DNA from: Macrostomum lignano | Taxonomy: Eukaryota | NCBI GenBank assembly: GCA_002269645.1 | Contig: NIVC01000572.1 | Location: forward strand, 323,669-387,668 | DNA length: 64,000 bases | Direction: 5' to 3' | Shown: positions 25,722-54,238 of the stretch, piece by piece | Position numbering within the stretch: position 1 is the first letter of the stretch | Layout: every line of letters starts with the position of its first letter | The notes under the pieces: generated by a model | The model's database searches: none | Told to the model about the DNA's origin: nothing | Seen by the model: the letters and a program-made list of their open reading frames with translations, nothing else | Position numbers and translations under genes: made by a program

Positions 25722-27026
25722 TTAGTGTTCCTCGTTAGCATTTTGACTCAACAGCAGCATAGTGTTGTACATCTCGCTAAAACAGCTGCTCAAGTCGCTG
25801 TCAGTAGTTGCAGATATCTCGCAGCCATATTGAAGCACTAGCAGCAAAATGCTCCTAGTATGGGAACAAGTGCTCAAAGTAAGCTCGATGCTAACAGCTT
25901 CCTTGAGGTGAGCCAATGCATCCTGTGTGAATTCGCCGGCCAAATTAACGGTTGCAGCACCCAGAAAAGTAAAAGCAGATGCGGTTAAAGGGCTGCCGGG
26001 AAAGTGTTCCTTTAAAGCAAACGCGCTTTTACTTAGAAAGACGCTGGCTTTCTCTAAACTCTTCATCAATTCTTCAGTAGAAACAGTTTGATTCAACGGC
26101 TGCTTCTTCAATCTAGCTGTCAGAGGACAGGTCTCTTCATACTCGCTGACTCCTTCGATGTAGTCAGAAAATGCAATGAAATAAATCTTGGAACGTTCGC
26201 TAATAAGGTCTGAGCAGTCGATGAGCTTGCGCGCTACAGCAATCAGTGCACGACTCTTTCGAGTCTGACGCAGTTCAACAAAGCAGGAGGCCATTCGTAG
26301 AATAACGACAATCGACTGGGTGCTTGGCACAATGTCCGAATCGCTGCGCCGAACCAATTTGTTATTACGCGTTCTACGCTCCAACGAGAAGTCTAGAAAC
26401 TGTGGCGCTTTCTCAAAAAATCTACGCCCGCCAACATCTTTTTGAGTAGCGCAGTTCAACATTAGCCTGGAGACGGACTCGCACATGAGGCCAGTCAGCT
26501 CCGGGGCCAGGGCTGGCCAAGAGTCGCCTAGGCGCAGCAGATATTTAGCAAGCCGGTAGGCACCCTCCGTCAGCCAAAGCCAAGCGAAGCTGCCCCGATG
26601 CGAGTCGCTGCACAAGGCCAGATGGGCCTCGTTAACTAAGAACAGAACGCTAGCGAATGCCATTCCTATTCTTTGTTCACCCTCTTCATCAATAAACTGA
26701 TTAGCCAATTGTCTGAAAGCAGCAATACGATCCAATTTGTCTACGGATTTGACAGATGACCAGAGTAGTTCTTCAGCTTGTTGGCCAATGAGTGCCAGAA
26801 ATTCGTTCTGCAGTTCGCAGGCGCTAGCCAGGTCGCTGCTGCAACGACGCCTGAGCTGCTCGTTTGCCAGAATGACCAGTGAGCAAGCTCTGGCAAACGG
26901 AGCCGCGTCACCACATGTAAATTTAAATGCGTTGTTTCTGGCTGTCCAAAACTCTGTATGATCCTGCTCGGGTACAAACCGCAACCAGGTACCCACTCGG
27001 ATGATGGGCTCTTGACCAGAGCTCAT
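25722..27026 (-). CDS. Array paralog P4: single TPR-like module only (434 aa), truncated copy
   Basis: Homologous to the first exons of P1-P3 (LFLVNEAHLAL, LVRRSDSDI, ELRQTRK, ETCPL, PLTASAFTFLG). It reads through to a stop where the other copies have a GT donor. Confidence 0.8.
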   Translation of the reverse strand: MSSGQEPIIRVGTWLRFVPEQDHTEFWTARNNAFKFTCGDAAPFARACSLVILANEQLRRRCSSDLASACELQNEFLALIGQQAEELLWSSVKSVDKLDRIAAFRQLANQFIDEEGEQRIGMAFASVLFLVNEAHLALCSDSHRGSFAWLWLTEGAYRLAKYLLRLGDSWPALAPELTGLMCESVSRLMLNCATQKDVGGRRFFEKAPQFLDFSLERRTRNNKLVRRSDSDIVPSTQSIVVILRMASCFVELRQTRKSRALIAVARKLIDCSDLISERSKIYFIAFSDYIEGVSEYEETCPLTARLKKQPLNQTVSTEELMKSLEKASVFLSKSAFALKEHFPGSPLTASAFTFLGAATVNLAGEFTQDALAHLKEAVSIELTLSTCSHTRSILLLVLQYGCEISATTDSDLSSCFSEMYNTMLLLSQNANEEH

Positions 27027-28437: not shown

Positions 28438-31400
28438 TCAACACTCTGTGTCTCTACCGTAACTGGCATCAATGAGTTGAGCCGGTTCGCACATCTGCAA
28501 CAGCTGCTCGTGATTAATTTGCAGTCTGCGAAGTATTTTCTGCTTGTCACGCGGCGCAGCCAGCGTGTACTCATTCAAACCATTGAGAAAGTCGTTCCGC
28601 CTAGGGATATTGTTAGACGTTCGCGTCATGCGACACTTTGGCACGCAGAGGTAGATCCATTCGCTATCGCAGACATTCTCGTGCGCGTTCCATAGCTTCA
28701 TCAGGTAGTGCGAGTAGCACATTATTTCAGTGTAGGTTGGCAGGTTATCTTCAGGATAAACTCGACCAAACATAGCCTCGCAGGTTTCTCTGAGATGCTG
28801 TTTGCCCTCCCAATCGATAATGGGATCTGGGAAGATGTAAGTAAACAGTAGAAGTAAAAGATGTAGGAGCGCATATTAATTTTAGCCAATGCCTTTCAAA
28901 AATATTCCAGAAACGCACCAACTAATCGCTCAGCAACGAACCGGTCGCCAAGTCGAATTTCCGTCCATATAGCGTCATCGCCTAGCAGCAGACTTCTTGT
29001 CTCTACAGAGCAATCTCTACTCATTTCTAAGATTGCCTGAAATCGGCACATTTGGGTTAAGAGAAACACTGAGCGTTCACGGCGCATCTGATGCTGTACA
29101 TCGAAACTGTGGGGTTACAATTCTCACTCTGTTCCTACTGCAGCTCAGAGCTTCTACCCTATAACAGCGGGTGAACTCAAGCTAGGCCTATTTTGCCCCT
29201 CGCTTACTGCGGCTACCTTAAAGGGTGATCGACATAAGCCACTTCATATGAATACTAACCAGGGCCAACTCCGCTTAACCTGCAGCACTGGCGGTGAATG
29301 CCCTAACAAAATTGGCTAGAGATCTTCGATTAATAAACCTATCAAAACAAATAGACAGCTTGACATCTTGAACTCACGTCAGCAGCAGTCACTATGCCAG
29401 ACCACTCGCTCTGGCGATCCGACGTTGCAAAGTACACAGCCAGCTTCCTCGCTACATCAATAGATCGCCAAGCCCAACAACTGGTTGCGCATCCGTTAGC
29501 AATCAGGTTGCGCTGGATTTTTAGGCAGGCCCTCAAGCAATTCAGCGCTTTCTCTTCCTGGTCCTCCAGCTGCATCATATTATAGTACATCACAGCTAGC
29601 AAAGCGTAGCAATCCCCAGTTAGAGGATGCAGCGGTTCCAACAGCTCCAAGACCCTTGACGCCCGACGAAGTTTAAGCACAGCGGCATTATACTGTGAAT
29701 AAGCCGTTTTTGTGAGATCTTTGACCGCGCTTTTGTAAAGAATGACTGCAGTGGATAAGTGTACACAGGCGTGCAACGGCGTATCTAGAAGTCCGGTAGA
29801 GGTGCACGAATCATAAGCTTCTTGGAACGGCGCCAGTCTACGCTTCGGCTTAGGCATGGGGAGAAGTTCTACATTCACATAATCCTGATTCAAATCCAAC
29901 ACTGTTGTACTGTTATCCGATGAGTTCATGAATTCATTGGTTGCACCGAGTGCATCGTCCAATATTGCGATTCTGTGTTCGACAAGAGCAAACACAGGGT
30001 CCGATAAATCATTGTCAGATTTTGGAAGCCAAGATTGTAGCGATTGACTCAAAGATTTGGCAGAACGCTTTATCTGCCCGCTGCGTAGCATCCTTTTTGG
30101 CAACAGTTCGTTGAGATCGACGCAAACCTCGGCGAGACTGCTGTCGAGTACCGCACCCAGGTGGAACCAGGCCGCGCTCGCCTCGAAAGCTCCGCGCAGC
30201 TCGTTGCTTAACTTTCTACTGTTATTCATCAGGCACCTGGCCGATCGCCAATTGTCAGACCAGAAACGCAGCAGGACTGAGTCGGTGAAAGAGTACCAGT
30301 TTTCCCTGATGTACCTACCAGTCTTTGGAGAGTTCACTGAGTAACCAACAGGTGAAGATCTATTCAGACGCCAATTTTTTCCCAACTGTAAGTCCAAAAG
30401 CACAAATTTTGCCTCATTTGCTTGCCAGAAAGCGCAGCAAACGGCTACGGCTTCTGCCATTTCTGCTACTTCGCCACGCTGTAATTTCCTGCGCAACTGA
30501 GATAGCTTGAAGCTGCTTTGTCTACTGATGTGCAAAGAGAATTTCTGCGAAAGAAGCTCTTGAACAGCATTTTGCTCCACGCCAGCAAGATCTATTGCAC
30601 ACCGAATCAGGTGGAACCTGGCAATAAATAGTCGACATAATATTGCAGCTAGAGCTGAGTCAGTTGCGATGCACTCTCGCAATCTTCGCCTAAAATAATC
30701 TAAACAGTCTTGTCTATAACAGTCGGTGAATCGGAGGTCAACAAGAGGAAGAGAAGGATTTTGGTGCTCAGCTGTCTCAGCTGCCTCCAGAGGTAGCAAA
30801 GATACAGTTGACGAAGAGCTCAGTCGATTCAGCTCAAAATCGACGTCAGACACACCTGCTATTGGATGCTCTTCTTTGGTCGCACTAAGGTCGTTATGAT
30901 GCAGAGATTTCTAAAGAAAAAAATTCGGCTAATCATTAGAATATTCCCATTTAACACTTTAACCGTAGATAATATTGAATGAGATACTAAGACTTACCAC
31001 GGAGCTGTGCAGCTCTTTCCATCGGAGTGCAATAGCGCTCTCATCGTTCTCAAACAATCCTGCAGCGACGCTAATTGTTTGCAACAAATAGCGCATCGTG
31101 TTACTCCTTTGCGATAGAGCCATCTCTACCTGAACTGCCTCTTGTAGATACGCGAGAGAAGTATCATTAAACTCCGCCGTTCTATTAGCTGTCACAATTC
31201 CAAGCATTGTAAGCGTTGACGCAAAAATAGTACTTTTAGAAAAGCTCTGTCTCAGCCGGTACGCGCTGCGAGTCAGCTTTTCCAAAGCGCTGTCGTATAG
31301 CTCTCTTAGCTCTCGGGCGTTTAAAATAACCGACCCAGCGTTCAGCTTGCTGTGCAAAGGACTTGTACGCTCGAAGTCATTGACACCATCAAAATAGTCA

Positions 31401-32239
31401 ATAAAAGCACTCAAGTAGTGCTTGGAAAGCTCGTCTAGAATTGTTGATTTGCCTAGCAGCAAACGGGCTTGACAAATCAGCGCAGTGCACTTATCCATCT
31501 GACGAAGCTCCAAAAAGCACGTGGCCATGCTAACAATAGCTACCATCGACTGCTCGTTCAACACAATTTCAGCATCGATTCTGCGAGTGAGACCTTTTCT
31601 AACCCGTCTCTCAATTGCAGCCTGAAAATGCGAGAAAGACTTCAACAAGTACTTGTGCGCGTAGACGTCTTTGACGCTGGCGCAGTTGAGCAGCAAGCTG
31701 CCAACGCTGAATCGAACGCACGCAGTCATTTCTGGTCCGATTTCTTTGCTTTGAAGGCAAATCTTGCCGAGTCTCTGGGCGCTTTCAACCAGCCAGAACC
31801 AGGCCCACGATCCCAGCTTCTTCGGATCGCGTAGGGCCATCTGACCTTCGTTTGCTATGAAAACGACAGTAACGAAATATAAAACTGATTTTTCTTCGTT
31901 AAAATTAAAATTTGCTAAATATTTGTTGAGTCGATCTGAGTACTTCTCGCTATCGCTGCAGGTAATGTAGCTCCAAAGATCTTTAATAGCATTTCGTCCC
32001 AATAAGTTCATAAACTTTTGTTGAATAGTTTTAGCGTCGCTGAGATTTTGCATTAGAAGGTAATGAAGGCCAAGCATCACGTGACATACAGCTTTCGGCA
32101 GAACTTGATGAGATCGATCCGAATTTTTCGGTTCTGAAGCTTCGACAAGCCTAAGACGCTCTCGCCAGTACTGAAGAGCTTCTTCCCGAGGCACGACCTG
32201 AAGCCAAATTCGCATTTCAACCGGCTCCTGATTCTGCAT
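28438..32239 (-). CDS. Array paralog P3: double TPR-like module plus conserved C-terminal domain, 1093 aa; exons 30998-32239, 29378-30910, 28919-29036, 28438-28826
   Basis: Junctions gtg|gtaagt..tttag|aaa, gac|gtgagt..ttcag|gca and g|gtgcgt..cccag|at (phases 0,0,1). Sum 3282 nt, open. TPR_12-like HPLTGDCYALLAVMYY...KALNCLRACLKIQ. Confidence 0.85.
29246..29300 (-). other. 5S rRNA-derived fragment (SINE3-like head) in an intron of P3
   Basis: Minus strand gttaagcggagttggccctggttagtattcatatg resembles the 5S internal control region gctaagcagggtcgggcctggttagtacttggatg. Confidence 0.5.
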
Positions 32240-33499: not shown

Positions 33500-36400
33500 T
33501 TAAAAATTCGCAAATTTGTAGTGAAAGCGTTTAGCAAACTTGCATTCATTTAACAGCAGATTGTGATTCTGTTGTAGTCGGGTGAAAATTTTGTTTTTTT
33601 CCTTGACGCTTTGGCGTGAGTACTCGGAAATACCCAGCAAAAAGTGGTTTCGCACCACGTCAAGTTTTTCCAGCGGACAATCTCGATTGTCACCGTTGTG
33701 GCACAGCTCCCAGTGCTGACTAAACAGCTTGTTGAGGTAAGTAGCGTAGACTCTGATCTCGCCATCGCTTGGTAGACAGTCCTCTGGAAACTGGCGATCC
33801 CTAAACAGATTTGTGAGGCCTTTCATGCTGACAGTTCGCTTTTCTTCCCAGTCTACCAACGCATCTGTAACGTTGATTGATGTTTTTTTATAAACGAGGA
33901 AATCTTATTTGTCAATATAGCTAGATGGAATTAAAAATCCTAATTAAAAATCCATTCAATAATGAGAAAGTGTGTTCTAAACTGTGTTTTTACATTCAGG
34001 TAAACCAAGTCTCAAATACCAAATGGCTACACGTGCAAATTTACACTCACCTGATAGAGTTTCAGCCAACATAGTCTCGGAATTCGATGCATCGTCAATA
34101 TCGACTGGCATTTGACACATCAAAGTCTTTCGACCAAGAAGGGCCTGCCGAAGACAAATATGATTAAATGTACCGCGTCCAGAATATTTTTTAAAGATTG
34201 CATGCATAATAGTGAAAAACTTACAAACAATTTATCGAATATACTTTGCCATTCGCGTTCAATCAGCGCATCCTCATCATTCGTGTTTTGCCGCAACATA
34301 CGAAACTGCTCTCTGCAAATTCGAGCCACATCTAAACACTTCCATAGCCAGGGACTGGGCGATGCTTCCTTGACGATGAGATTGCTCTCAATCCTGGCAC
34401 ACTTTCTGAGACACTGAAGGCATCTAGATTCTTGCTCGTCAATCTGCATCTGACTGGAGTAGAGAACGCTTAAAACAGTGTAACAGTACGTCACTTTGAC
34501 ATCATCGCCGCAGATAAGCTCGAGAATTCTAGCAGCTTTCCTAAACTTTAAAATTGCAGCACTGAAACTGTCGTAATGAGGCTTAAACGGATTAACTTCC
34601 CCATAGCGTAATAGCTGAAGACCCGCTTGCATGTGCACCAAAGCGTGGGCCACTGTATCCATTAGACCTCTTTTTTGGCACAGGACGTAAGCCTCATCCA
34701 GTTGTTTCAGCTTGTCGGACGCCTGCGACGTGTCTATTATAAAGTCGAAAGTCTCTAGGATGCCAGTTGACTCTAAAAGGCTAGAGACGAGACCACCGTG
34801 AAGCCTGCGATTACGCCTCCCAGCTGATTGGTTCAGTAGACGATTCAACAATGCGGGAAAGTTCACGCACACAGAGTTTAAGTAACTCAATAAAGTCTCA
34901 ATTCCTGGGCCATTGTGACTTTTTTCTAAACGTTTTAATCGGTTTAGGTCTTGTAGCAAGTCAACTGTGGTTGTAATGAGTTTTTTATCGGTCTTGTAGC
35001 GATCATCGAATGCTACGACGTCATTTAGTCGGTAGAAGCCTTCTGCTAAATAATTTTCCAAGAAAATAAGAGCAGGAATTTCGTCAGATTTCCAGCTATT
35101 TCGGATCGCGTTGAACAAATCCTGACCGCGCCTGAAACATTCTTGAGCTCTTTTCCAATCGTTGCTTTTCTTGTTACTCAGCCGAAAACTATACAAAGCC
35201 CAAGAAACAAGCTGCGAAGCGAATGACTCATCGCCATCGTCCCAACGTTGCCGCACCTCTGCGGCGGACTTTTGCTGATAATATTCGAGCGCATTACCAA
35301 GAGCCAGCATGCCTTCATTGACAGTCCAGAATGCGACTACAAAGATCAATTCTCTGCAATGGCGTGGAAAAGATTCAGACATAGCTTTAAATGAAAAGCT
35401 TCCATTGGTTTCTAGCTTCAGACCAAATGCAAGAGAGATCAGGCGTGAGACTTTAGCTTGTCGGCATTCAGCTTTTCTCAAGAAATACGAGCGTAAATTA
35501 TGTCTTGAGAGAAATAGAAGGAAAACCAATCTGTGTAATATTTGGCTACGGTCCAGAATATTGTTTAATTCCTTCTTCCAGTAAGCTAAGCTTCCTTCGC
35601 GATATCCATCGGTGAACTCTCTTGCTTTGGCAACTACATTAAAGACACTATCGCTTTGACTGGACGCTTCAACATCGGTAGGAACGTCGACTTGAGATCG
35701 AATTGTTTCTGGTTCTCTTGTAGTAACGATCTAGAATTAGAATGTGATACTTACATTAGCTCTTACTGAAGTACCGGTATGCTATAAGTGAAAAAATTAA
35801 ATTTAAATCATTACCAAGAATAAAAATTATCAATGCTTACGGTAAAGTACAACTCTCGACACTTGTCTCGAGCAGCCTGCGTAGTTGCCAGCGTGGTACC
35901 TTGCTGCAAAATCTGGATCATATTTGCAGCCATAATAGTGTTGGTTTCGAATTTAGACTCTAGCGAAACAGCCTTCTCTAAATAATACAAACCGCCTTCA
36001 TGCTCCATTGTAAAGTCGGCTGCTTCGTTCACGCAAACAATGCCCATCAATGTGTACGCAGAAGCGGTAAGCCCAAGTTCGGAGATTTCTTCCGTTAAAT
36101 TTTTCAAACACTCGCGCAGGTGTTTCTTTGCACTTCTATATGCTTTCATAAGCTTTTCGCGGTCAAGTAAACGAGAACCCGCATTAAGTTTACTGGCTAG
36201 AGGACAAGTTTCCTCAAAATCAATTAGTCCGTTCAAGTACATGGCATAGGCAGTAAAGTAAGTCTTGCAAACGATTTCAGTATCTGCTGGTAACTTGTTG
36301 AGTTTAAGAGCCTGATCGATCAACTTTCGAGCCTTCGTAGTCTGACGAAGTTCAATAAAAATGGCCGCCAACTTTAGAATTCCTTCGATAGATTCATCGA

Positions 36401-37412
36401 CAACTCTAATATCCGAATCTAGCTTGCGAACTATTCTTGAATGTTTTCTAGGCTTCCAATTAATCATGGCTTCAAAACAAAGGAATGCTTTAGATAGATA
36501 CCAATGTTCAAAGGTACCCTGCTGCATTCCACAGCTAAAAAGAATGCTTCCAGTGGCGTGTCTGGATAGGTCGACAAAAACTTTGGACTCTTTGGGCGCT
36601 CTTCGAATATAATCAGTACACAGCCAGAAAAGAAACTTTGTTTTCTCTCTTAGTCTATGCGCTCGGACACTGGTCCGGTTAAAGAGCATTAAACGGCATT
36701 CGCCCACTATATAATGTAAAGTGATGAACTGAAGTGTGCAAGAATGCTCATGGGTCCACTCAAATGTCAGTTGACTCGACGCAGCCTTTGACTCTCCGCT
36801 TTTGTTGCTAGACTTAGGCTTGAAACATTCTTTTATAAGCTCTTCATACTTGTCTGCATATCTATTAGCCATAAGAAACTTTGCGCTAGCTTTCACACTG
36901 ATTCGCCGGTTTGTATTGTTTTCTTTGCTTTCAGTAACGATGCCTTCATGTTGCGAAAGTTGAGACGTTATAGCACCATTTCCTTCTCTATTGTCTTTAG
37001 GAAGCTTTGAAAAAGCTCGGGTATTATTTCCCTTATTCATACTGCCCTCGTCGATTACACCACCGCTGCATTCAGGGTCCGAATTCGGAGAGGCGGCGTG
37101 GTTAAGCGTGTCTGCAGCTTGTTTGCCAATTAAATTTTTGAACAAATTGAGGAATCTTTGACCTTCCGTTGCTTGATTCCTAAATAGATATTCGTTTCCC
37201 AAAAATACAAAGATAAAAGCCTTTGCAAAAAACCCAAATGTCTTTTCAGCATCTTCGTTCTTACATTCATCGACTCCAAGTAGTCCATCTCTTGTTTTCA
37301 GTTCATTGTAACGAGACTTTAAAAAGTCAAAATATTCCTCATTCGGGAAGAAGTTTAACAAGGGTGTCGGATTAGGCGGCTGTGGAAGAATCTCTAAGAC
37401 CGTCGCGTCCAT
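33500..37412 (-). CDS. Array paralog P2, 1178 aa; exons 35841-37412, 34225-35730, 34051-34144, 33500-33864
   Basis: Junctions acc|gtaagc..tctag|atc, ttt|gtaagt..ggcag|gcc and g|gtgagt..tacag|at (phases 0,0,1). Sum 3537 nt, open. Confidence 0.85.
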
Positions 37413-38127
37413 TCCAAATTAGCTTGGAACGAGCAAGACTTTACTCGCATCGAGCAGGCACCAGAGACCAGAGTCAACCCGCGCTTCTTCGGCGAGGGGC
37501 TTGTAAATTATTTATACAACACCGATTTAAAACTGAAAATTGAATTACAACAGGCTCGTTAGATTGAATACAAATATTTTAAACTTTTTTCCTACCTGTA
37601 TGGCACAGGATATTTATTACTATAAAAATCAAGCGGAATTTAAAAAGTATTATATATCCTATATACTAAAAATGAGTTGTCTGTGGGTAGGTAGGTAGGT
37701 AGGTATGCGATAGATTTCAGAAAAAATGGCTCAACAGATTTTCTTCAAACTTGCACCATTCGATCAGAAATTTTCCTGGGACGGTACATGCATCTTGGCT
37801 AAGAAATTGCTCAATGTTAAAGGGATTAAATATTCGAAAAACGTGCTTTTTTGCAAAGGTCAAGCAGCTCTTTCGACCTGAAATGCGTTGTAAGAATGCT
37901 AGAGAAAAAACTGACTGACTGAATTCCAATTGTGATAAGGATTGCATCACAACCAGTTGAAAACAGTGCCGAAGAAATGCACACAAAACTTGATTTAAAT
38001 TGCGTAACCACATTGCTAACTTAAATTGAGACTGATACTGGCTGACTGAGAAATTGATTATGTCATAAATTTTAACTCTAACCGATTTGCAATAAGAATT
38101 TAATTATAAGGGCCACAATTCAAGACA

Positions 38128-38195
38128 AGAGATAGCATAGATGCGAACAGACTGGACTGCTAATGCTGCGACCTGGGTTCGAATCTTAGTAGTGC
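38128..38195 (+). pseudogene. tRNA-like sequence (Ser-GCT-like anticodon loop), likely a SINE head or pseudogene
   Basis: A-box-like tagcatagatg, ct-gct-aa loop and B-box ggttcgaatc; no acceptor stem that pairs well. Confidence 0.45.
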
Positions 38196-38254
38196 AAAAA
38201 GATTTTTTTATTCAAAAATCTTAAAAACACAAAATGCTAAACACAAAAAAGCAC

Positions 38255-41200
38255 AATGTCAAACATTAAAGAGCCACCATGTCAAACATTAAAGAGCCAC
38301 CATGTCGACCATTAAAGAGCCACCATGTCGACCATTAAAGAGCCACCATGTCGAACATTAAAGAGCTACCATGTCGAACATTAAAGAGCCACCATGTCGA
38401 CCATTAAAGAGCCACCATGTCGAACATTAAAGAGCCACCATGTCCAACATACACATGACTCCATGTTGAACATTCAAGAGCTACCATGTCAAACATATAC
38501 ATGACGCCATGTCGAACATAAAAGAGCCACCATGTCGAACATTAAAAAGCCACCATGTCAAACATTAAAGAGCCACCATTTCAACCCTAAAAGAGCCACC
38601 ATGTCGAACATTAAAGAGCAACCAGGTCAAACATATACATGACTCCATGTCGAACATTGAAGAGCCACCATGTCGAACATTAAAGGGCCACCATGTCAAA
38701 TATTAAAGGGCCACCATGTCAAATATTAAAGAGCCACCATGTCAAACATTAAAGAGCCACCAGGTCAAACATGAAAGTGCCACCATGTCTAACATTAAAG
38801 AGCCACCATGGCAGACATATACATGACTCTATGTCGAACATTCAAGAGCTACCATGTCAAACATATACATGACTCCATGTCAAACATTAAAGAGACACTA
38901 TGTCAAACATTAAAGAGCCACCAGGTCAAACATGAAAGTGCCACCATGTAACACATTAAAGAGCCACCATGTCGAACATTTAAGAACCACCATGTCAAAC
39001 ATAAAATAGCCACCATGTGAAACATATACGTGACTTCATGTAAAACATTAAAGAGCTACCATATCAGACATATACATGACTCCATGTCAAACATATACGT
39101 GACTCCATGTTAGACATTAAAGAGCCACCATGTCGAACATTAAAGAGCCAACATGTTAAAAATACAAGAGCCACCATGTCAAACATATACATGACTCCAT
39201 GTCAAACATTGAAGAGACACCATGTCGAACATAAAAGAGCCACCATGCAAAACATTAAAGAGACACTATGTCTAACATTAAAGAGCCACCATGTCGAACA
39301 TTTAAGAGCCACCATGTCAAACATATACATGACTCCATGTTGAACATTCAAGAGCTACCATGTCAAACATATACATGACTCCATGTTGAACATTCAAGAG
39401 CTACCATGTCAAACATATACATGACGCCATGTCGAACATAAAAGAGCCACCATGTAAAACATATACGTGACTCCATGTCAAACATTGAAGAGCCACCATA
39501 TCGAACATAAAAGGGCCACCATGTCAAATATTAAAGAGCCACCATGTCAAACATTAAAGAGCCACCAGGTCAAACATGAAAGTGCCACCATGTCTAACAT
39601 TAAAGAGCCACCATGGCAGACATATACATGACTCTATGTCGAACATTCAAGAGCTACCATGTCAAACATATACATGACTCCATGTCAAACATTAAAGAGA
39701 CACTATGTCAAACATTAAAGAGCCACCAGGTCAAACATGAAAGTGCCACCATGTAACACATTAAAGAGCCACCATGTCGAACATTTAAGAACCACCATGT
39801 CAAACATAAAATAGCCACCATGTCAAACATATACATGACTCCATGTCAAACATTGAAGAGACACCATGTCGAACATAAAAGAGCCACCATGCAAAACATT
39901 AAAGAGACACTATGTCTAACATTAAAGAGCCACCATGCCGAACATTTAAGAGCCACCATGTCAAACATATACATGACGCCATGTCGAACATAAAAGAGCC
40001 ACCATGTAAAACATATACGTGACTCCATGTCAAACATTGAAGAGCCACCATATCGAACATAAAAGGGCCACCATGTCAAATATTAAAGAGCCACCATGTC
40101 AAACATTAAAGAGCCACCAGGTCAAACATAAAATACCCAACATGTGAAACATATACGTGACTCCATGTAAAACATTAAAGAGCTACCATATCAGGCATAT
40201 GCATGACTCCATGTCAAACATATACGTGACTCCATGTTAGACAATTAAGAGCCACCATTTCGAAAATTAAAGAGTCAACATGTTAAAAATACAAGAGCAT
40301 CCATGTCAAACATATACATGACGCCATGTCAAACATTGAAGAGACACCATGTCGAACATAAAAGAGCCACCATGCAAAACATAAAAGAGCCACCATGTCT
40401 AACATTAAAGAGCCACCATGTCAAACATATACATGACTCCATGTCAAACAGTAAAGAGACACTATGTCAAACATTAAAGAGCCACCATGTCGAACATTTA
40501 AGAGCCACCATGTCAAACATATACATGACTCCATGTTGAACATTCAAGAACTACCATGTCAAACATATACATGACGCCATGTCGAACATTAAAGAGCCAC
40601 CATGTCAAACATTATAGAGCCACTATGTCGAACATTTAAGAGCCACCATGTCAAACATATACATGACTCCATGTTGAACATTAAAGAGCCACCATGTCGA
40701 ACATTTAAGAGCTACCATGTGAAACATGTACATGACTCCATGTCGAACATTACAGAGCCACCATGTCAAAGATAAAAGAGCCACCATGTCAAACATAAAA
40801 GAGCCACCATGTCAAATATTAAAGAGCCACCAGGTCAAACATGAAAGTGCCACCATGTAAAACATTAAAGAGCCACCATGTCAAACATATACGTAACTCC
40901 ATGTCAAACATTGAAGAGACCCCATGTCAAACATTAAAGAGCCACCATGTCCAACATAAAAGAGTCACCATGTAAAACATATACGTAACTCCATGTCGAA
41001 CATTGAAGCGACACCATGTCGAACATAAAAGAGCCACCATGTCGAACATAAAAGAGCTACCATGTCAAACATTAAAGAGCCACCATGTCAAACATATAAG
41101 TGACTTTATGTCGAACATTAAAGAGCCACCATGTCTAACATTAAAAAGCCACCATGTCCAACATTAAAGAGCCACCATGTCAAAAAGTAAAGAGCCACCA

Positions 41201-41690
41201 TGTCTAACATTTAAGAGCCATCATGTCAAACATTAAAGAGCTACTTTGTCTAACATTAAAGAGCCACCATGTCAAACATTAAAGAGCCACCATGTCAAAC
41301 ATTAAAGAGCCACCATGTCAAACATAAAAGAGCCAACTTTTTGAACATTAAAGAGCCACCATGTCAAACATAATAGAGCCACCATGTCAAACATAATAGA
41401 GCCACCATGTCAAACATTAAAAAGCCACTTTGTAAAACATAGAAGAGCTCCCATGTCAAACATAGAAGAGCCCCCATGTCAAACATAGAAGAGCCCCCAT
41501 GTCAAACATAGAAGAGCCACCATGTCAGACATTGAAAAGCCACCGTATCAAACATAAAAGAGTTACCATGTACGAGCGTAGAACAAAAAAGAGCCACAAT
41601 GTATAACATAAAAGAGCCACAATGTAGAACATAAAAGAGCCACCCTGTTAAACATAAAAGATACACAATTTCAAACGTAAAAGTAAGCGA
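38255..41690. repeat. 3.4-kb satellite of 23-bp monomers (catgtcaaacattaaagagccac / catgtcaaacatatacatgactc) with higher-order duplications
   Basis: Period 23. Variant blocks recur at offsets 805 (35x23; 38705 vs 39510) and 644 (28x23; 39211 vs 39855). Confidence 0.95.
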
Positions 41691-41759
41691 ATTTTAAAGG
41701 AGCCGCTATAATGCTAAGGAAATTGTCGCACTAGCTACTTATTGTCTGGTGGATGCTTA

Positions 41760-42212
41760 CTATTTGGGGATGCTATCTATCTTGGGGATGCTTGCTATCT
41801 TGGGGATGCTTGCTATCTGGGGGATGCTTGCTATCTGGGGATGCTTGCTATCTGGGGATGCTTGCTATCTGGGGGATGCTTGCTATCTGAGGGATGCTTG
41901 CTATCTGGGGGATGCTTGCTATCTGGGGGATGCTTGCTATCTGAGGGATGCTTGCTATCTGGGGGATGCTTGCTCTCTGGGGGATGCTTGCTATCCGGGG
42001 GATGCTTGCTATCTGGGGGATGCTTGAAATCTGGGGATGCTTGCTATCTGAGGGATGCTTGCTATCTGGGGGATGCTTGCTATCTGGGGGACGCTTGCTA
42101 TCTGGGGGATGCTTGCTATCTTGGGGATGCCTGCTATCTGGGGATGCTTGCTATCTTGGGGATGCTTGCTATCTGGGGGATGCTTGCTATCTGGGGGATG
42201 CTTGCGGTCTTG
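41760..42212. repeat. 17-18-bp minisatellite (ggggatgcttgctatct)
   Basis: Direct reading. Confidence 0.95.
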
Positions 42213-42373
42213 GGATGATTTCTTTTTGCAATGCACTTCATTTGAGCAGTTTGTCTGTTGTCTTTTTGAAGGATTTTTGGCTGTTTTTTTGTTACTTGTA
42301 GAGAACAGAGATTCTATCCAGATATATAATATATAAAAATATTACTGAATTAGTACTTAACCAAGGTGCTAAA

Positions 42374-43672: not shown

Positions 43673-46600
43673 CTAGTAGGTAACATCATAATTTTCATGA
43701 AATTTGCGCGCTTTCGGGCAAAGCGTCACCAACGAATTGTGAACCTGCTGCAGCTGCTTGATGATGCTGATCTTAACTGTTGCAGTGCTCTCAGAATAGA
43801 TGTTCATGCCTCGAAGAAAGTCATTTCGCTTTACTAGGTTATTTCTCGAGAGATTGTCTAAAGTGCATGGATCTTCCCGTGTCTCCTGTTTGCTTTGTTC
43901 AGCTGTTCCAGTACTGCCCTGTTTGTGCCTTGCCATACGGCAACTGACCAAGTGACGGTCGAACAGCTTCATCAGATATCGAGCGTAGCATCGAACTTCA
44001 GTGTCAGAGGGCGGACTATCTTCGGGAAACTCTCGATCCCACATCATCACAGCGATAGCTTTGAGGCTCCGATTTCGCTTCTCCTCCCATTCGGTTAATG
44101 GATCTAGTAAAAAAACGAATACGTTGGTAAATTTACTTGCACATTCGTAAAATATAGCAACAGGTTAAAAAAGCACTATACTTGGGATATGTATACTCAG
44201 TTAGTCAATTTTGAGTAGTTTTAACAATACAACATTTTCATTGCATTCTCTCTACTTAAAATTGGAAGGTACAAGTAACCTAGCGTCATTAATCATTGTA
44301 TCTATAAGGAAAAGCGATGAAATAAAGACCAGCGCTTTCGATGGAAAATCTAAAAATACGAAAGGCTCAGACCAAGTTTTAACACAGGGCCCATACATAA
44401 ATTATACATACTAAAAAGCATGGGTTTGCTCACTAGCAAGCAAAGTAAATATAATTTTCAAGCACAACAAAGGTGAAAAAACCTACCAGTCAGTGCTTCA
44501 GTGAGAAGGTTTGAAGCACCCAAAGGAGAGGAACCAAAGTCTTGCAAGTAAAATAACGGCCTGTCTTTGTACAACGCAGTCTAAAATAGCGTAAAATCAG
44601 CAAATTAACTGAATGCACAAATGCGTGATTAAATAGCATGTAAAATATTACAGCACACATGAATTTAGTCCACAATTAATGTGAAAAAATAAGTAAAACA
44701 CATTTTTAGTATATGAAGAAGATATCTACGAACCTTAAACTTTTGACTCAACTCATTCCATGACTCGAGATCTACAGAGAATGAAGCACCATCGCGGTAG
44801 TTATTGGAAACTCGGTTTAGAAATTTTTGAAAGAACTGCACAATCTCTAAGCCTTTCCAAAGCCAAGGACTGGGTGATACGCCTTTCACTACCAAGCGCT
44901 TTTCCACGCTTAAACACTTCTTAAGACAGAGAAGGCACTGCGTCTGTTGATCGTCTAGCTGAGCGTGATATCGATACATATAGGCAAGAATTAAGTAGCA
45001 AAAAGCTGTTTTCACGTCGTTCGGACACAGTAGCTCGAGTATTCTGGCAGCCTGCCGAAACTTAAGAATGGCGCCACTTAAAGTGCCGTAGGGTGATTTA
45101 GTTGGGTCTCTAAATGCTTGAATAAATAGTTCAATACCCACGTGCATGTGAATGAGAGCATAGAGCTCCGTATCAACCAGCTCCGCTCTTTGACACAAAT
45201 CATACGCTTGTTGAAGAATTTTCAGCTTGCCAACGTAATGCGCAACGGTTAAAACAACATCTAAATTGCATTTATCAGCGGGCTTTTCTTCAGTCTTATT
45301 AAACTCATAAGGTAGCACTTCCAGCAGATCCAAAAGTCCATGGAAATTAACCTGAGCTTTATGCAAGCATAACATCAAGTCCGTAGCGGTCGAATCGACA
45401 GTACCAATGCTTCGCCCGACGTCTTTTGAATGCTTATCGACGTCTTTCAGCAACAAAGTCACAGAATGAATAAGTTTATAATTAATTTCGTAAATACTGT
45501 CCACGGAGAACATTCTATCCAGCTGGTAATAAGCGTTGGATAAATGTTCTTCTAGAAACACGAAAGCAATCCAATCAAGACCTTGTATGCTGGTTTCGTT
45601 TTTCTGGACAATTTCACTAACCAGATTTAAGGACTCGAAAGCCTCGAGCCAGGAGTTTTTCTGCGAAGCCAAGAAGCTCGTTACAACAGAACAAGCTCCT
45701 AAAAGATACGAAACAATCATTTTTCCGATCTGTTCTGACCATGAGTCCCTAAAGTCAGTTTTAACAAATGACGAAGCGTTCTTCTTCTGATGCTCCTCTG
45801 AGGCTTGCAGAATAAAAATAATGCCTTCGTTCACCAACCAAAGTGCAACTAGGAAGACCAACATTTTGTGATCTTTGGGGAACCTCAACTCGAAGTCCTC
45901 ATATGTAATTCTGGCTAAACGACAGACATCCAGCTTTATACCGAATCCAATATCCAGTAGGTGTGCAGTAGGGGGCGACCCAGTCCCGGGCCCGGGCCCG
46001 AAAAGTCGGGAATCCCGACCAAAATCGTGGCCCGACCCGGGCCCGGGCCCGACCCTAAAAAAGTCGGGAAATCGGGACAAGTCTTTTTTCCCTAAAGGCA
46101 CTAACCGCGTGCGAAAGAATAAAATTATTTTTCAACATATTCACACTAATTTACGTTTAATTCCAGCCCCAGGAAAATGCAACTGCAACTGCAACTGTCT
46201 GTGACCGTGAGTGTCAGCCACAGCAGTTTCCACTTTCCAGGAAGATCGGATTTTTTCCAGGAAGATAAAATTAAAACAGTTTTGCAATACTTTTTTGCAA
46301 TATTGATTCCACTTTACACGCTGCAGGCTGCAGCCTAAAAGCAAAAATATGATTCTTTAAAAAGTTGATTTGTCATTTTTAAGCTTTTGTAAATAACATT
46401 TCCTATTTACATTCCAAGAAGTACCTATTAAGGGCCAAGGCAACCATTTTTCCAAGAAGTTTGCTATCTATCAGTATCAGAGTTTGTAATCGTGTTCATA
46501 TTTGTATCGTATTCGTAGGTAGTCGTAGTCGTAGACTCATAGTATCGTATTCGTAATCATATTCGTTTAGGTGGGTAGGTGAGCAGGTAGGCAGGTATCA

Positions 46601-49349
46601 GCTAATTACTTGTATTTCCATTGTCTGTTTGCCTGTTCTGTTGAGACAGTTGAGTGTTGTGTTGTGTTGTCACTTCATTTGTGTTCTGCTCTGTTGTCTT
46701 GTCTTGTTGTCTTACTGAATACTGACTGTGTACATGGCTCTTTACATTGAAGCTATGTAAAGGAACTAAAAATTCAAATAAAAGAATCAATCAATTGATT
46801 TGGTTCTTACTTCCTTACTGCTTCCAATGCCAAGTGCCTTACACTTAATGCTTCAGCTTTTCTTCTTTTTGATTACTGCCACTGCCAGTGCCAGCCGCAC
46901 TGCCGCAGTGCCTGCTTGCCTACCTCACTGCCTGTTAGTGTCATTGTCACTGGCACACACACAGTACTTGTGCCACACAGGGACATTGAATTTGAACTAT
47001 TGAGTATATTGATATTTGAGTATTAAGTCTTTTAATGTAACTCTTATCTATTCTGAAGTCGTAACTAATGTATTAAATAATAATAATATTTATTATATTT
47101 ATATATTATTATATATTTAATGTATTTATATATTATAATATATTTGATGTTTATCATATATTTATTATACATTTAATATATTATATTAAATTTAAAAATT
47201 CATATATTTATTATATATTTAATAGTAATCCGCATATGCTAAAAGTATTAAGATTTATTATGATTTTTTTCCAATTATTGAGCTGTCCTAAAGATCTTGT
47301 CCCGAATTCCCGAGGCCCGACCCGGGCCCGAGTCCTCATTCCCGGGCCCGACCCGGGCCCGACTTTGGCCGTCCCGGTCGCCCCCTAGTGTGCAGCCTTC
47401 TCTTGTTGATGTTTTGCAGAAGACAAAGCTTGAGTATTCAAATAATGGCGAGTAATGCAGAGAATGCAAAACACCCTGACCGGAATGTCTTCGATGTCCT
47501 CATACTTGCGTACTAACTTCTTTAAATATGCAAGCGATTCTAGTCGGTAGCCATCCAAAAAGTCTTTCGAGTCTTTGATCGTACGTATTATAGTCATCCA
47601 TGCTGAGCCATCGCTTGAATCAACAGAAGACTCGAGATTGCTTTTCGGTACCATATCAGCTTGGAGATTTGAAGCGCTGCGCACATTGGAGCTCTCATCA
47701 GCAGGCTGTGTTCGTACGCTCTTCTCTAAAAATCTTCTTTTGATGGCTGAATTCTGAAGAATTTAAAGGAAAATGAAGTAGCATGTTACTAAGCAGGTGA
47801 ATAAACATGAAGTAATGAAAATAACTATTAAAAGGTATGCAAAACTTACAGCTCTGTTGTACAACTCCTTGCATTTTGCAGAGCTAGTCGAGTCAGAACG
47901 CAAATTAGCACCAACGTGAAGAAACTGCAACAAATATGTTGCCGTCACTGTTCCCGACTCCAATGCACACTCCAAATGTACAGCTTTCTCAAAGTTCTGA
48001 AGAGCCTCTTCCGAAAACGCACCAGCACTATTGACGAGAACTACAGACAGCATTGTGACAGCTGAAGCAGTGAGAGGATCACTTGCGTAGTTACTTCTCA
48101 AAACAGACGCGCTTTTCTCTAAGCATGACTTAGATAATTCGTACTTCTTTTTCAAAAAATCTCGATTAAGAGCTTTACTGCTGCAATCAAGACCACTCTT
48201 CAACGGGCATGTGTCCTCAAAGTGGCTTACTCCTTCGACATAGTTGGCGTAAGCTGTGAAGTAGGAGACAAAATCAACGCTTTTGTCTTGCAAGCGATTC
48301 AGAAGCTGCTTTCCTAGCTTAACCAGCGCCATACACTTTTGCGGCAGACGCAACTCTAACAAACAAGCAGCCATGTTCAGAATGGAAGTGATGGACCACC
48401 CATTAGGAATAATGTCTGAATCGATTCGTCGAATCAAGCTGGCCTTCTGAGGTCGCCGCTCGATTGCCCCGTCGGAATATTGGAATGCCTTTACGAGGAA
48501 CTTGTGCTCGTAAATTGTCTTCCTTTTAGCACAGTTAAACATCAGTCTGCTCATGGTTAACCTCAAAGAGTTTGCAAGACAAGGGTCGACTGCGACTGCC
48601 TTCTGACTGAAGTACTGAGTCGCCAACCAATGGGCAAATTGACAATAAGACAACCAATCTGGTTTTTCAGAAGTATCATCGTTCCAGAGTGCGATGTAGC
48701 ATTTACCTGCAACGTAATGCGCAGTGACAAATGTTATTGCGCTCTTGAAGCCCTGTTTATCATTGGCTTCCTCTGTTTCCGATTGTCTCTTTTGTCTTTC
48801 TTGCTGTTGATCAGTGGTTTTTGCCATGCTTGATTGATTGTTCTTTGGTTGTATGTCGCTTTCGCTCTTTGTCTCGGTTTTTTGCTTTCTTTGCTCATAT
48901 TCAAAGTGCTCAGAAGAAATTTTATCAAGGAACTCACTGTACTGAGAGATCATAACCAATTTATGTTCGCTGGGTGTTTTTAGTTTTCGCTTATTAGCGG
49001 GTTGATCCACACTCTCTTGATTTTCGCCGTGTTTTTCTTTCTCTACTGCTCCAGACTTTGCTTCGTGACCACTGTTTTCCATCGCTGAGTAGAGTAATTT
49101 AAACGCGTCACCCAATAAACTCTCAAACTCTTTCAAAAAGCGCTCTGTTTGAGCATTATTTTGCCGAACTTGATACTCATTTATCAGCATTACAGTGGAA
49201 AGAGATTTCTCGAGGAGTCCAGCATCTTTTGAATGATGAACGCGATTATACCTGTCTTTCCAGTACTGCAAGTTGAACGTATTCGCAAAATACTGAAGAA
49301 ACGCAGCCTCTCCATCTTTAATCAATCCTTGATTTAGTTCAGAAGCCAT
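43673..49349 (-). CDS. Array paralog P1, 1205 aa if the insertion is removed; exons 47850-49349, 47388-47753 + 44734-45960 (split by a hAT element), 44487-44580, 43673-44103
   Basis: Junctions gct|gtaagt..ttcag|aat, aag|gttcgt..tttag|act and g|gtaggt..actag|at (phases 0,0,1). Excising 45969-47387 and one TSD restores QQEKAAH-LLDIGFG in frame. Sum 3618 nt. Confidence 0.8.
45969..47387. mobile_element. 1419-bp non-autonomous hAT element inserted in exon 2 of P1
   Basis: TSD GTGTGCAG at 45961-45968 and 47388-47395; perfect 12-bp TIR TAGGGGGCGACC; subterminal CCCGGGCCCG repeats at both ends; AT-rich non-coding interior. Confidence 0.92.
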
Positions 49350-51612: not shown

Positions 51613-51995
51613 TTAATAACCAACTTCATGATTTTCGTGGTAGTCCCTCGCTGCTGGGCAGTTTGACAACAATAAATTATGAACTTCTTGCAGCCGATTA
51701 AGAATTTTAATCTTCTCCTGTGCGTTGCTCTGAGAGTAAATATTAAGGCCTTGAAGAAAGTCGTTTCGCCTAACCTCTCCGCTCTGTCCAAACGAATTTG
51801 GAATTTGGCATTTACCGTATTTAGAGAAAAAGCAACTGTCGGAGTGACTGTTGAATAACTTCGTCAAGTATTGGGCGTAACAGCGGATCTCTGTGTCAGA
51901 TGGCGGACTGGCGATAGGAAATTCACGATCCCGCATTATCACTGCGATTGCTTTCAGGTTGCGAGATCGTTTCTCCTCCCAATCGGTGAGTGGAT
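51613..51995 (-). CDS. Orphan last exon (C-terminal domain) of array paralog P0
   Basis: Acceptor gcacag|at (phase 1), then DPLTDWEEKRSRNLKAIAV...RRNDFLQG...YHENHEVGY*. Clearly homologous to the last exons of P1-P3; upstream exons not found. Confidence 0.75.
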
Positions 51996-54238
51996 CTGTG
52001 CAAAAGTTTAAACAAAAACAGCTTATTGCAATATTAGCGTCAGATGCGCACAGAACAGCAGTAAAATAGCAATTTTTTAACATTGGCTGGTTAGCTGCCT
52101 AAAAAGCGTTAATTAATACTTTGTCGATCCAAGTCAGGGCGATAGATACGAATAAAAGATATATATTTATTCGCAATAAAATGAGGCGCCTAAAATTTTT
52201 AGCACAGCAGACGCAAGCTACCTTCCCTCGCTTTGACTCTGTGTATTTTTTGTTGTTTCTGCCCTTTGTGTACTACTACCAGTATGCTTTACACATATTT
52301 AACTAACTCGCGGTCTGCATTGTTGCCTTCCGAAAATGCTCATTTTAAGTCACGGGTTTCTTTAATTTTTATACACAGCATCCACACCTTTTCAAGTTCA
52401 ATTTGGCTTATATCATTTACGTTTAAGCCAACTTATTTCAGTTTTCTTTAAAAAATACACTGCTGTCCAACAGCCTTCTGACCCAGAAAAATGTATAGAC
52501 GATTGATTTTTCTCAAACCGCACTCTGCTGATTATACGAGCAATATTGCATAGGTCGTGTAAACGCATCCCAAGTCTTATGCTGACACAGCTGAATAAAC
52601 AGGAAATTTAATACTCATTTCAGCTACTGAAAAATATACGCACTAACTACTGAAAACTAGCTGAAATCACCGCTTCTGGGAATGCTTGCCATAGCTTGCC
52701 GTTATCTATGGTTTGACTGGGTGCTATACTGAGTGGCCTATCTAGTGTATATAAGATCGATGGTCTGGGCTGGCCAAATCCAAGTCTGGGCTTGCTTTTC
52801 AAGGCCGGACTACCCTAGACTCAGCTTTCTACATACGGCCATTGGTGTTAAAACAAAATTGCATGTGTAATGAGCAGCTCAGCCGCTGATTAGAGCACAT
52901 CAAAAGCTAAGCGACTATGTTGATTGTAATATTTCCAGAAATTCTGTGCATCAATTAGGGTTGGATTTACAACAAACGGAACGGTTTAAGATCCGTTTAG
53001 AACTTTCTGATTCGTACGACTTGCTTGCATTTTTAAAAAGATTCTGTTTAAATAAAACCCTAAAATAAACCGACCGATGGTAAACACCAACGCTAACATT
53101 TATGATTATGCAATTAGACCTAGGTATTATTTGCACGCTCTTCCATGTTAAGTAAAACTGATAGCAAGAGCAAATTTATCTATACTCGTCAAAGTTAATA
53201 GAGGTTATTTCGCTTCGTTTTACTTTTTTCAGCAACAATAACAGATAATACAGAATGGTCTTCAGTTATCTAAAATGATAAATTGAAAATTCGTACTTAT
53301 TAAAAAAATAAATGACTGAGAGTCATAAGCTTTACTTACCCGTTAAAGATTCAACCAAAAGTACATAATTAGTAATAGGGAAGGCGCCAAAGTCACTCAA
53401 ATAGTATATATTCTTCTTTCTGTTTACGGCAGTCTAAAATTCAATTTATATTAACATATACCCTGTGGGGAATTTCAGTGCGCCCAACAGTTCGCCGACG
53501 GCGGCGCCCCACTGGGGGCGACTGTGCGCCAAAGCGTACTGCTGGGTCTACGCCGCGCCGGCGCCCCGAGGGGTCCGGGGCGCAAGGTAGATTTTTTTCT
53601 GAAAAAATATGCTATTTACCTACTGTTAGTAGTATGTTAAGAGCATGCTGCAACAGAATCTTTTAAAGGAGGATTTTTTTCCAGCTTTGCGACCCTGCAG
53701 CTACTGGGCCAGTAGGCCTTGTATACTGCTAGGCATTGCACCAAATGCACTTTGTTTTTGTTGTAACTTCGTCCTGTTCTTGCTCGTTGTCATTTGAGAC
53801 AATTTGAGACGCACTAATTTGAAGAAAAAAATCGTATATATCAATTTATGCGTAATATATATATATAGAAATTTTCATTTCATTTTTACTTTAAGTAGCA
53901 TATATTATATTGCAACTGTTTTCATAGATCTTGAGCGACAATATATTGACAATATACAAAATAAAATACTATATTATTATTTCTACACTTTGGAGTTACA
54001 ATTATAACAATTTGCAAAAACAGTAAAACATTTACAGGAATTCGTAATCGAGTAACAGAAATATGAAATAACAGTAGAGTAATCCGAAGGGCAAAATACA
54101 GAATAGGTAAATGAAAATGAATAAACATGCAAGACAGCGAACATGGGACAAAGTTAAAATAATAATACACTGAGTCGAGTAATAATGGAGGAAAATCCAA
54201 AGACGGTTTTGATTGATTGGTTCTTCGCCTAAGGCGCC

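What the first reader, a model, noticed from the sequence alone, without database searches (positions are those of the whole stretch)
43673..44103. Conserved ~125-aa exon-encoded C-terminal domain of unknown function (four copies)
Seen in 51613-51995, 43673-44103, 33500-33864 and 28438-28826: consensus D.l.dWE.K...R.FP....PsdtE...Ya.YL.KLf..H...C-[variable loop]-RNdFL.G...Y....K..I...LQ..H..Ll..C..A. By eye it is more conserved than the solenoids, with invariant H-x3-C and H-x6-C pairs, and it always enters at a phase-1 acceptor. Inference: a helical-bundle effector or metal-binding module that could be exon-shuffled.
Basis: partly seen in the sequence, partly recalled or inferred. Interest (0 to 1): 0.7.

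Follow-up and report, generated by a model that had tools for sequence, protein, structure and literature searches.

The report
Flatworm-only helical tail domain
The four repeats are real: each is the last exon of one of four neighbouring, related genes of the flatworm Macrostomum lignano, and it encodes a conserved helical tail of about 125 amino acids that matches no known protein domain and whose function is still unknown.

Summary
Four minus-strand terminal exons (44103-43673, 51995-51613, 33864-33500, 28826-28438) encode a 121-143 aa domain with 30 invariant columns. Each is entered through a phase-1 intron. The window is Macrostomum lignano contig NIVC01000572.1. The exons end four tandem paralogues (A, D, B, C) of about 1,100-1,200 aa, all-helical, TPR-like, with no Pfam match.

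A profile of the domain searched against 1.84 billion representative proteins found only four, all M. lignano members of this family with the same architecture. Pfam, NCBIfam, PADLOC and PDB sequence searches gave nothing. AlphaFold2 gives a moderately confident helical bundle (pLDDT 73). Foldseek finds no match better than E=1.5.

Copies on other contigs of the assembly show purifying selection on the domain (pN/pS 0.22, against 0.40 for the solenoid).

H51, C55, C80 and C129 stay invariant. The second His is Gln in one duplicate copy. The His/Cys spacings follow the conserved face of the helices. Metal binding is therefore possible but untested.

Exon shuffling is not supported, and nothing indicates a catalytic effector. 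The most likely reading is a lineage-restricted, non-catalytic docking module at the end of a fast-evolving scaffold family. Interest is modest.

The parts
43673..44103 (-). Gene A, exon 4 (last exon). It encodes a 143-aa copy of the tail domain, with a 17-aa insert in the variable loop. The range includes the stop codon.
51613..51995 (-). Gene D, exon 4. It encodes a 127-aa copy of the tail domain. The range includes the stop codon.
33500..33864 (-). Gene B, exon 4. It encodes a 121-aa copy of the tail domain. The range includes the stop codon.
28438..28826 (-). Gene C, exon 4. It encodes a 129-aa copy of the tail domain. The range includes the stop codon.
44487..44580 (-). Gene A, exon 3. 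A 94-nt, poorly conserved linker that ends in phase 1. In the full-length model of the paralogue gene B, the first helix of the tail domain starts in this exon.
53341..53434 (-). Gene D, exon 3 (94 nt), with an intact AG acceptor and GT donor.
34051..34144 (-). Gene B, exon 3 (94 nt).
28919..29036 (-). Gene C, exon 3 (118 nt).
35841..37412 (-). Gene B, exon 1 (524 codons), alpha-solenoid. The four-exon model gives 1178 aa, the same length as the annotated protein PAA80642.1 (P0007).
34225..35730 (-). Gene B, exon 2 (502 codons), alpha-solenoid.
30998..32239 (-). Gene C, exon 1 (414 codons).
29378..30910 (-). Gene C, exon 2 (511 codons).
47850..49349 (-). Gene A, exon 1 (500 codons).
47388..47753 (-). 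Gene A, exon 2, the part upstream of the transposon insertion (122 codons).
44734..45960 (-). Gene A, exon 2, the part downstream of the transposon insertion (409 codons).
45969..47387 (.). A hAT-like non-autonomous transposon that interrupts exon 2 of gene A. Its terminal inverted repeats read TAGGGGGCGACC, and its 8-bp target duplication is CTGCACAC. It is absent from the other genome copies of the locus.
25722..27026 (-). A fifth paralogue (E) that consists of an exon-1-like ORF only. No exon 2-4 was found downstream of it.

Best explanation
The ~125-aa unit is the C-terminal helical-bundle tail of a family of large (about 1,100-1,200 aa), intracellular, all-helical, TPR-like solenoid proteins. 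So far the family is seen only in Macrostomum lignano.

Four full paralogues (A, D, B, C) and one exon-1-only copy lie in tandem. Each full gene has two large solenoid exons, a short linker exon, and this terminal exon.

The most likely role is a non-catalytic docking or oligomerisation module. It would be the constant end of the protein, contacting a shared partner or another family member, while the long solenoid diverges faster and supplies the binding surface.

The conserved His and Cys residues sit on the core-facing stripe of two long helices. They are either ordinary core residues or ligands of one structural metal ion (His-Cys3).

Shown: the copies, the gene structure, restriction to this species in the databases searched, the helical prediction, and purifying selection.

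Inferred: the intracellular location, the docking role, and any metal site.
For: - Four copies with 30 invariant columns.
- Identical exon architecture and a phase-1 last intron in A, B, C and D. Gene D is complete on contig NIVC01001597.
- The profile search of 1.84 billion representative proteins returns only 4 proteins, all M. lignano and all with the domain at the extreme C-terminus.
- No hit in Pfam, NCBIfam, PADLOC or PDB sequences.
- The AF2 model is all-helical, with pLDDT 73 and pTM 0.67. The same helix pattern appears in the full-length model.
- No Foldseek match below E=1.5 in PDB or BFVD.
- Comparison with the duplicated genome copies gives 20.5 synonymous against 17.5 non-synonymous changes in the tail exon. 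That is pN/pS 0.22, P=1.5e-5 against neutrality. The solenoid gives 0.40.
- Invariant residues of the two long helices cluster on one face (R=0.62, P=0.016 and R=0.70, P=0.038). H51, C55 and H122 lie on that face.
- There is no N-terminal hydrophobic signal sequence in the three N-termini read (by eye).
- The full-length model matches only TPR-type solenoids, and weakly.
Against: - No partner, expression pattern or phenotype is known, so the docking role is inferred from architecture alone.
- The difference in constraint between tail and solenoid is not significant (Fisher P=0.17).
- Two solenoid blocks are as conserved as the tail.
- The alignment is shallow: four paralogues of one species. 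Both the AF2 model and the list of invariant residues are therefore provisional.
- The full-length model is poor (pLDDT 43). Whether the tail folds on its own or packs onto the solenoid is not settled.
Confidence: 0.5

Rival explanations
1. The tail is a structural zinc (or other metal) module. H51 and C55 on the long helix, C80 just after the variable loop, and C129 (with or without H122) on the last helices would hold one ion that clamps the bundle and closes the variable loop. This would refine the best explanation, not replace it.
For: - H51, C55, C80 and C129 are invariant in all 8 distinct sequences.
- The spacing is H-x3-C-x7-C in three paralogues. The fourth has a 17-aa insert between the two Cys residues.
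- The protein looks intracellular, so disulfides are unlikely.
- H51 and C55 point to the same side as the conserved core stripe.
Against: - H122 is Gln in P0001, an otherwise intact copy.
- i/i+4 and i/i+7 spacings are expected for any residues on one helix face.
- Invariant Cys residues are also found in solenoid helices: C875, C940, C964, C968.
- C80 lies in a low-confidence part of the model, with pLDDT about 52-59.
- No known zinc-finger or RING model matches.
- Model coordinates could not be inspected, so ligand geometry is untested.
Confidence: 0.25
2. The tail is not an autonomous domain. It is simply the last few helical hairpins (a capping unit) of the TPR-like solenoid that happen to lie on their own exon.
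For: - The whole protein is predicted to be helix-turn-helix throughout.
- The first helix of the tail spans the exon 3/4 junction in the full-length model.
- Conservation of the tail equals that of two solenoid blocks.
- Foldseek hits for the tail are generic helical bundles.
Against: - The isolated tail gives a compact model with pTM 0.67.
- A poorly conserved linker, about 17-20% identical and of variable length (exon 3), separates it from the solenoid.
- hhalign finds no similarity between the tail and exon 1 (probability 0.3%).
- No TPR model matches the tail.
Confidence: 0.15
3. The tail is a HEPN-like RNase domain (a four-helix bundle with an R-x4-H motif). It would act as the effector of a TPR sensor, as in many conflict systems.
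For: - R-L-Q-x-x-H (R-x4-H) is present in copies D, B and C.
- A HEPN toxin (8yuf) is among the Foldseek hits, with TM 0.37-0.40.
- The gene cluster evolves fast, with partial copies and a disrupted member.
Against: - The Arg is Gln in copy A and the His is Gln in P0001, so neither residue is invariant.
- The Foldseek E-value is 2.6 and the probability 0.18, no better than for cytochrome b562 or the FAT domain.
- No HEPN model in Pfam or PADLOC matches, even at E<=1.
Confidence: 0.05
4. The tail is a mobile, exon-shuffled module that is also attached to unrelated proteins.
For: It occupies its own exon, bounded by a phase-1 intron.
Against: - Every protein that matches the profile has the same solenoid in front of it.
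- The seemingly orphan copy D has its exons 1-2 directly upstream on two other contigs.
- As a terminal exon it needs no phase symmetry, so the phase says nothing about shuffling.
Confidence: 0.03

Closest known systems
TPR-like alpha-solenoid scaffold proteins (Pfam clan CL0020), for example CTR9, Ski3, NASP, LGN/Pins and the Rap proteins
   Same: The body of the protein is predicted to be all helix-turn-helix. Its low-confidence model hits only proteins of this kind. One repeat gives sub-threshold TPR_14/TPR_2 hits.
   Different: No TPR model reaches its gathering score. A profile of the family finds nothing among PDB sequences. None of these proteins has a tail resembling this one.
Rapsyn and TTC3-type proteins (TPR array followed by a C-terminal Cys/His zinc-binding RING); recalled from general knowledge, not fetched
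   Same: The architecture is a TPR-like array followed by a small C-terminal module with conserved Cys and His.
   Different: A RING needs eight ligands in a cross-brace and is not a helical bundle. Here only four or five Cys/His residues are conserved, they lie on long helices, and no RING or zinc-finger model matches.
HEPN domain (R-x4-6-H four-helix-bundle RNases)
   Same: It is similar in size and is helical. Three of the four paralogues carry R-x4-H. There is a weak Foldseek hit to a HEPN toxin.
   Different: The motif residues are not invariant. There is no profile hit. The structural match is at noise level.
Separase, CHAT-domain proteins and SCC4/MAU2 (the names UniProt gives automatically to some family members)
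   Same: All have long helical repeat regions.
   Different: No CHAT, peptidase C50 or MAU2 Pfam model matches any member, even at E<=1. The tail is all-helical and far too small for a caspase-like fold.

Membership tests
TPR / TPR-like solenoid (body of the protein, not the tail) | Repeated 34-residue helix-turn-helix units that are recognised by TPR profile models. | tested here: inconclusive
   Only sub-threshold hits were found: TPR_14 at 16.6 bits against a cut-off of 23.5, and TPR_2 at 14.7 against 27. The secondary structure is all helical hairpins. Foldseek hits are all TPR-type, but the model has pLDDT 43.
HEPN | A conserved R-x4-6-H motif at the start of the last core helix. | tested here: not met
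   R117 is Gln in copy A, and H122 is Gln in P0001.
HEPN | A match to HEPN profiles, or a clear match to the four-helix HEPN fold. | tested here: not met
   There is no Pfam or PADLOC hit at E<=1. Foldseek to 8yuf gives E=2.6 and TM 0.37-0.40.
RING / zinc-finger modules | A defined set of Cys/His ligands with family-specific spacing (eight for a RING) that is recognised by profile models. | tested here: not met
   Only H51, C55, C80 and C129 are invariant. No zinc-finger model matches.
Metal-binding helical bundle (generic) | Ligand side chains that converge in space, and metal found in the purified protein. | not testable with these tools
Only the helix-face position of H51, C55 and H122 could be computed.
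CHAT / separase (clan CD peptidases) | A caspase-like alpha/beta fold with a His-Cys catalytic dyad, and a match to PF12770 or Peptidase_C50. | tested here: not met
   No Pfam hit in six family members. No strand is predicted anywhere in the protein.
Death-fold domains (DD, CARD, DED, PYD) | A six-helix Greek-key bundle of about 90 aa that is recognisable by fold comparison. | tested here: not met
   No death-fold entry appears among the first 50 of the 145 Foldseek PDB matches. There is no Pfam hit.
Exon-shuffled mobile module | The same domain in at least two unrelated architectures. | tested here: not met
   All four representative hits, and all genomic copies, share one architecture.

The most novel reading that the evidence does not exclude
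The tail is a previously undescribed His-Cys3 metal-clamped helical fold. It would serve as the constant signalling or effector end of a flatworm-specific, rapidly diversifying family of TPR-like sensors, for example in innate immunity or in conflict with transposons. The variable solenoids would do the recognition.
Probability: 0.1. Interest if true: 0.6.

Novelty: new variant of a known kind. Interest (0 to 1): 0.3.

Why it matters
If the tail folds as predicted, it is a new domain family with no detectable relative among about 15 billion proteins. It marks a tandem gene family that is duplicating, converting and losing members in a model flatworm.

M. lignano supports RNAi and transgenesis, so the function of such a taxonomically restricted family can be tested directly.

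As things stand, it is one of many orphan domains in a flatworm genome. It has no link to a known process, so its immediate importance is limited.

Tried and rejected
1. Word-indexed homologue searches with the domain alignment, with full-length gene B and with the family alignment returned only gene B's own database entry or nothing. They were uninformative beyond showing that there are no close relatives.
2. Pfam, NCBIfam, PADLOC and PDB sequence searches of the tail gave only noise: COP9_hel_rpt, API5, saposin, CbtA, AcrVA1 and ornithine aminotransferase, all with E>0.02.
3. Foldseek of the tail model against PDB and BFVD gave no hit below E=1.5.
4. A weak tblastn hit between the tail and exon 1 of gene B (PADTEIVC...YAMYL, E=0.13) suggested an internal duplication. 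hhalign rejected this with probability 0.3%.
5. The full-length AF2 model has pLDDT 43. Its Foldseek hits say only 'TPR-like'.
6. The UniProt names Separase, CHAT and SCC4 for family members are not backed by any Pfam hit.
7. A literature search for the gene identifiers found no paper.
8. The HEPN idea was rejected on motif variability.
9. Copy D at first looked like an orphan exon, which would have favoured shuffling. Other contigs show its exons 1-2 directly upstream.

Full report

The stated interval 43673-44103 is open on the minus strand. It translates to DPLTEWEEKR...FHENYDVTY.

- 51996-51616, E=1e-45, 51% identity.
- 33865-33512, E=3e-24, 37% identity.
- 28827-28459, E=3e-18, 30% identity.

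Nothing else in the window scores below E=0.1.

The invariant residues include H51, C55, C80, H122 and C129 (copy A numbering).

**2. Gene structure**

Reading the minus strand and checking frames gives the same four-exon structure for each gene:
- A large exon 1 of 414-524 codons, ending in phase 0.
- A large exon 2 of 502-532 codons, ending in phase 0.
- A small, poorly conserved exon 3 of 94 or 118 nt.
- The terminal exon studied here.

All junctions are GT/AG.

My model of gene B gives 1178 aa, the length of the annotated protein P0007. Gene C gives 1093 aa.

Gene A is interrupted within exon 2 by a 1.4-kb transposon (see section 8).

Copy D has only exons 3 and 4 inside the collinear part of the window. 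On contigs NIVC01001597 and NIVC01000421 its exons 1 and 2 lie directly upstream. It is therefore a normal fourth member of the family and not an orphan exon.

A fifth copy (E, 27026-25722) has only an exon-1-like ORF.

**3. Source organism**

The proteins found by the profile search are Macrostomum lignano hypothetical proteins (PAA83347, PAA66034 and others).

Locus L004, from NIVC01000572.1 of assembly GCA_002269645.1, is 100% identical to window 47412-23500.

The same locus is present on at least three more contigs at 92-99.8% identity. This fits the neopolyploid genome of this species (PMC10733133).

**4. How widespread is the domain?**

A profile of the four copies was searched with HMMER against 1.84 billion representative proteins. 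It found four proteins at E<=0.001, all with E<1e-50. All four are M. lignano members of this family, with the domain at the extreme C-terminus.

Word-indexed searches found nothing more.

Within the collections available here, the domain is restricted to this species and to one architecture. Exon shuffling is therefore not supported.

**5. What is the domain?**

No family in Pfam, NCBIfam or PADLOC matches it, and no PDB sequence does.

AlphaFold2 with the four-sequence alignment gives an all-helical model with pLDDT 73.2 and pTM 0.67. The helices are 2-10, 14-23, 34-64, 83-86, 93-103, 108-128 and 130-138. The loop at 64-82, which varies in length between copies, is disordered.

Foldseek finds no match below E=1.5 in PDB or BFVD. 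The best hits are generic helical bundles with TM<=0.4: cytochrome b562, the FBXL5 hemerythrin domain, a HEPN toxin and the FAT domain.

hhalign finds no relation between the tail and exon 1.

The rest of the protein is also predicted to be entirely helical. Its low-confidence model (pLDDT 43) hits only TPR-type solenoids such as CTR9, Ski3, Rap, NASP, APC subunits and LGN. Only sub-threshold TPR profile hits occur.

The UniProt names of some members (Separase, CHAT domain-containing, SCC4 homologue) have no Pfam support.

**6. Constraint**

Among the paralogues (omitting the A-D pair, which shows gene conversion), the tail exon has a mean pairwise column identity of 0.38. Exons 1, 2 and 3 have 0.25, 0.26 and 0.17.

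Two solenoid blocks are as conserved as the tail: gene B residues about 281-520 and 861-1000.

I compared the window with the duplicated genome copies:

| Region | Synonymous changes | Non-synonymous changes | pN/pS | P against neutrality |
|---|---|---|---|---|
| Tail exons | 20.5 | 17.5 | 0.22 | 1.5e-5 |
| Solenoid exons | 141 | 203 | 0.40 | 6e-16 |

The difference between the two regions is not significant (Fisher P=0.17).

The tail is therefore a functional, constrained coding sequence. It is at least as constrained as the rest of the protein.

**7. The His/Cys pattern**

Across 8 distinct sequences, H51, C55, C80 and C129 are invariant. H122 is Gln in P0001, an otherwise intact duplicate of gene A.

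The invariant residues of helices 34-64 and 108-128 cluster on one helix face (P=0.016 and 0.038). H51, C55 and H122 lie on that face. The x3 and x6 spacings are therefore what helical periodicity alone predicts.

Invariant Cys residues also occur in solenoid helices.

A His-Cys3 metal site remains possible. Three paralogues share H-x3-C-x7-C, and the protein lacks a signal peptide. It could not be tested here, because model coordinates cannot be inspected.

The R-x4-H motif, which recalls HEPN, is present in three paralogues only, and both of its residues vary.

**8. Dynamics of the cluster (context)**

- Gene A in the window carries a hAT-like element. It has terminal inverted repeats (TAGGGGGCGACC) and an 8-bp target duplication, and it creates an in-frame stop. 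The empty site is seen on three other contigs.
- Genes A and D are 92% identical over part of exons 1-2 but 76-78% identical elsewhere. This points to gene conversion.
- One copy of gene C has a compensated frameshift.
- The window differs from other copies by a 3.4-kb minisatellite, and by a non-collinear segment of at least 10.5 kb that starts in intron 2 of gene D.

The family is evolving quickly and tolerates the loss of members.

**9. Verdict**

It is partly unsupported: there is no sign of exon shuffling and no evidence of an effector activity.

My best reading, at confidence about 0.5, is a lineage-restricted, non-catalytic docking or oligomerisation tail of a TPR-like scaffold family. 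It may be stabilised by one metal ion.

It is an orphan domain of modest interest. The steps that would settle its role are orthologue searches in other Macrostomum species, metal analysis and a structure of the recombinant tail, and RNAi in the worm.

Noticed in passing
window 45969-47387 (target duplication at 47395-47388 and 45968-45961): A 1.4-kb hAT-like non-autonomous transposon sits inside exon 2 of gene A. It has terminal inverted repeats (TAGGGGGCGACC), GGGCCCG-rich subterminal repeats and an 8-bp target duplication (CTGCACAC). It puts a TAG stop codon right after ...EKAAH. The uninterrupted site is present on three other contigs of the same assembly, so the insertion is recent and specific to this copy.
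   Followed up: yes
window 37668-42324: A 46-bp minisatellite (38252-41683, 74 copies) and an 18-bp array (41745-42205) lie between genes A and B. The whole 4.6-kb segment is replaced by about 30 bp on contig NIVC01001597.
   Followed up: partly
window 53461-64000: This segment is not collinear with the other copies of the locus, where exons 1-2 of gene D lie directly upstream of exon 3. It is an insertion or rearrangement of at least 10.5 kb in intron 2 of gene D. It holds a 578-aa ORF (58505-60241, + strand) that looks transposase-like by eye but has no Pfam hit. The far end lies outside the window.
   Followed up: partly
L002 4686-6259 against 12068-13645 (window gene A, about 48765-47388): Genes A and D are 92% identical at the DNA level over the 3' half of exon 1 and the start of exon 2, but only 76-78% identical elsewhere. 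This mosaic points to gene conversion between the tandem paralogues. The annotated protein P0005 (PAA66035) is a chimaera: it joins the start of gene D to the rest of gene A.
   Followed up: partly
window 25722-27026 (minus strand): A fifth paralogue consists of an exon-1-like ORF only (434 aa). No exon 2-4 was detected downstream. It may be a truncated copy or a short family member.
   Followed up: partly
window 7374-7739 and 9554-9979 (+ strand): Two cyclophilin-type peptidyl-prolyl isomerase exons (Pfam Pro_isomerase, E=1e-36 and 4e-40) form a tandem pair. Minisatellites surround them.
   Followed up: no
window 6198-17560: A dense run of minisatellites with periods of 16-88 bp occupies 6198-7285, 7948-8398, 8757-9546, 10339-10816, 12511-12915, 14778-15066, 15563-16302 and 16843-17560. 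They create many spurious long ORFs.
   Followed up: no
L001 14693-14703 (gene C exon 1 on contig NIVC01001597): A 1-bp deletion is compensated by a 1-bp insertion 9 nt later, relative to the window copy. The frame is kept.
   Followed up: no
window genes A and C; L004: On the window's own contig, only gene B appears among the genes called for L004 (window 47412-23500). Genes A and C have no model in that stretch. UniProt's automatic names for family members (Separase, CHAT domain-containing protein, SCC4 homologue) have no Pfam support.
   Followed up: partly
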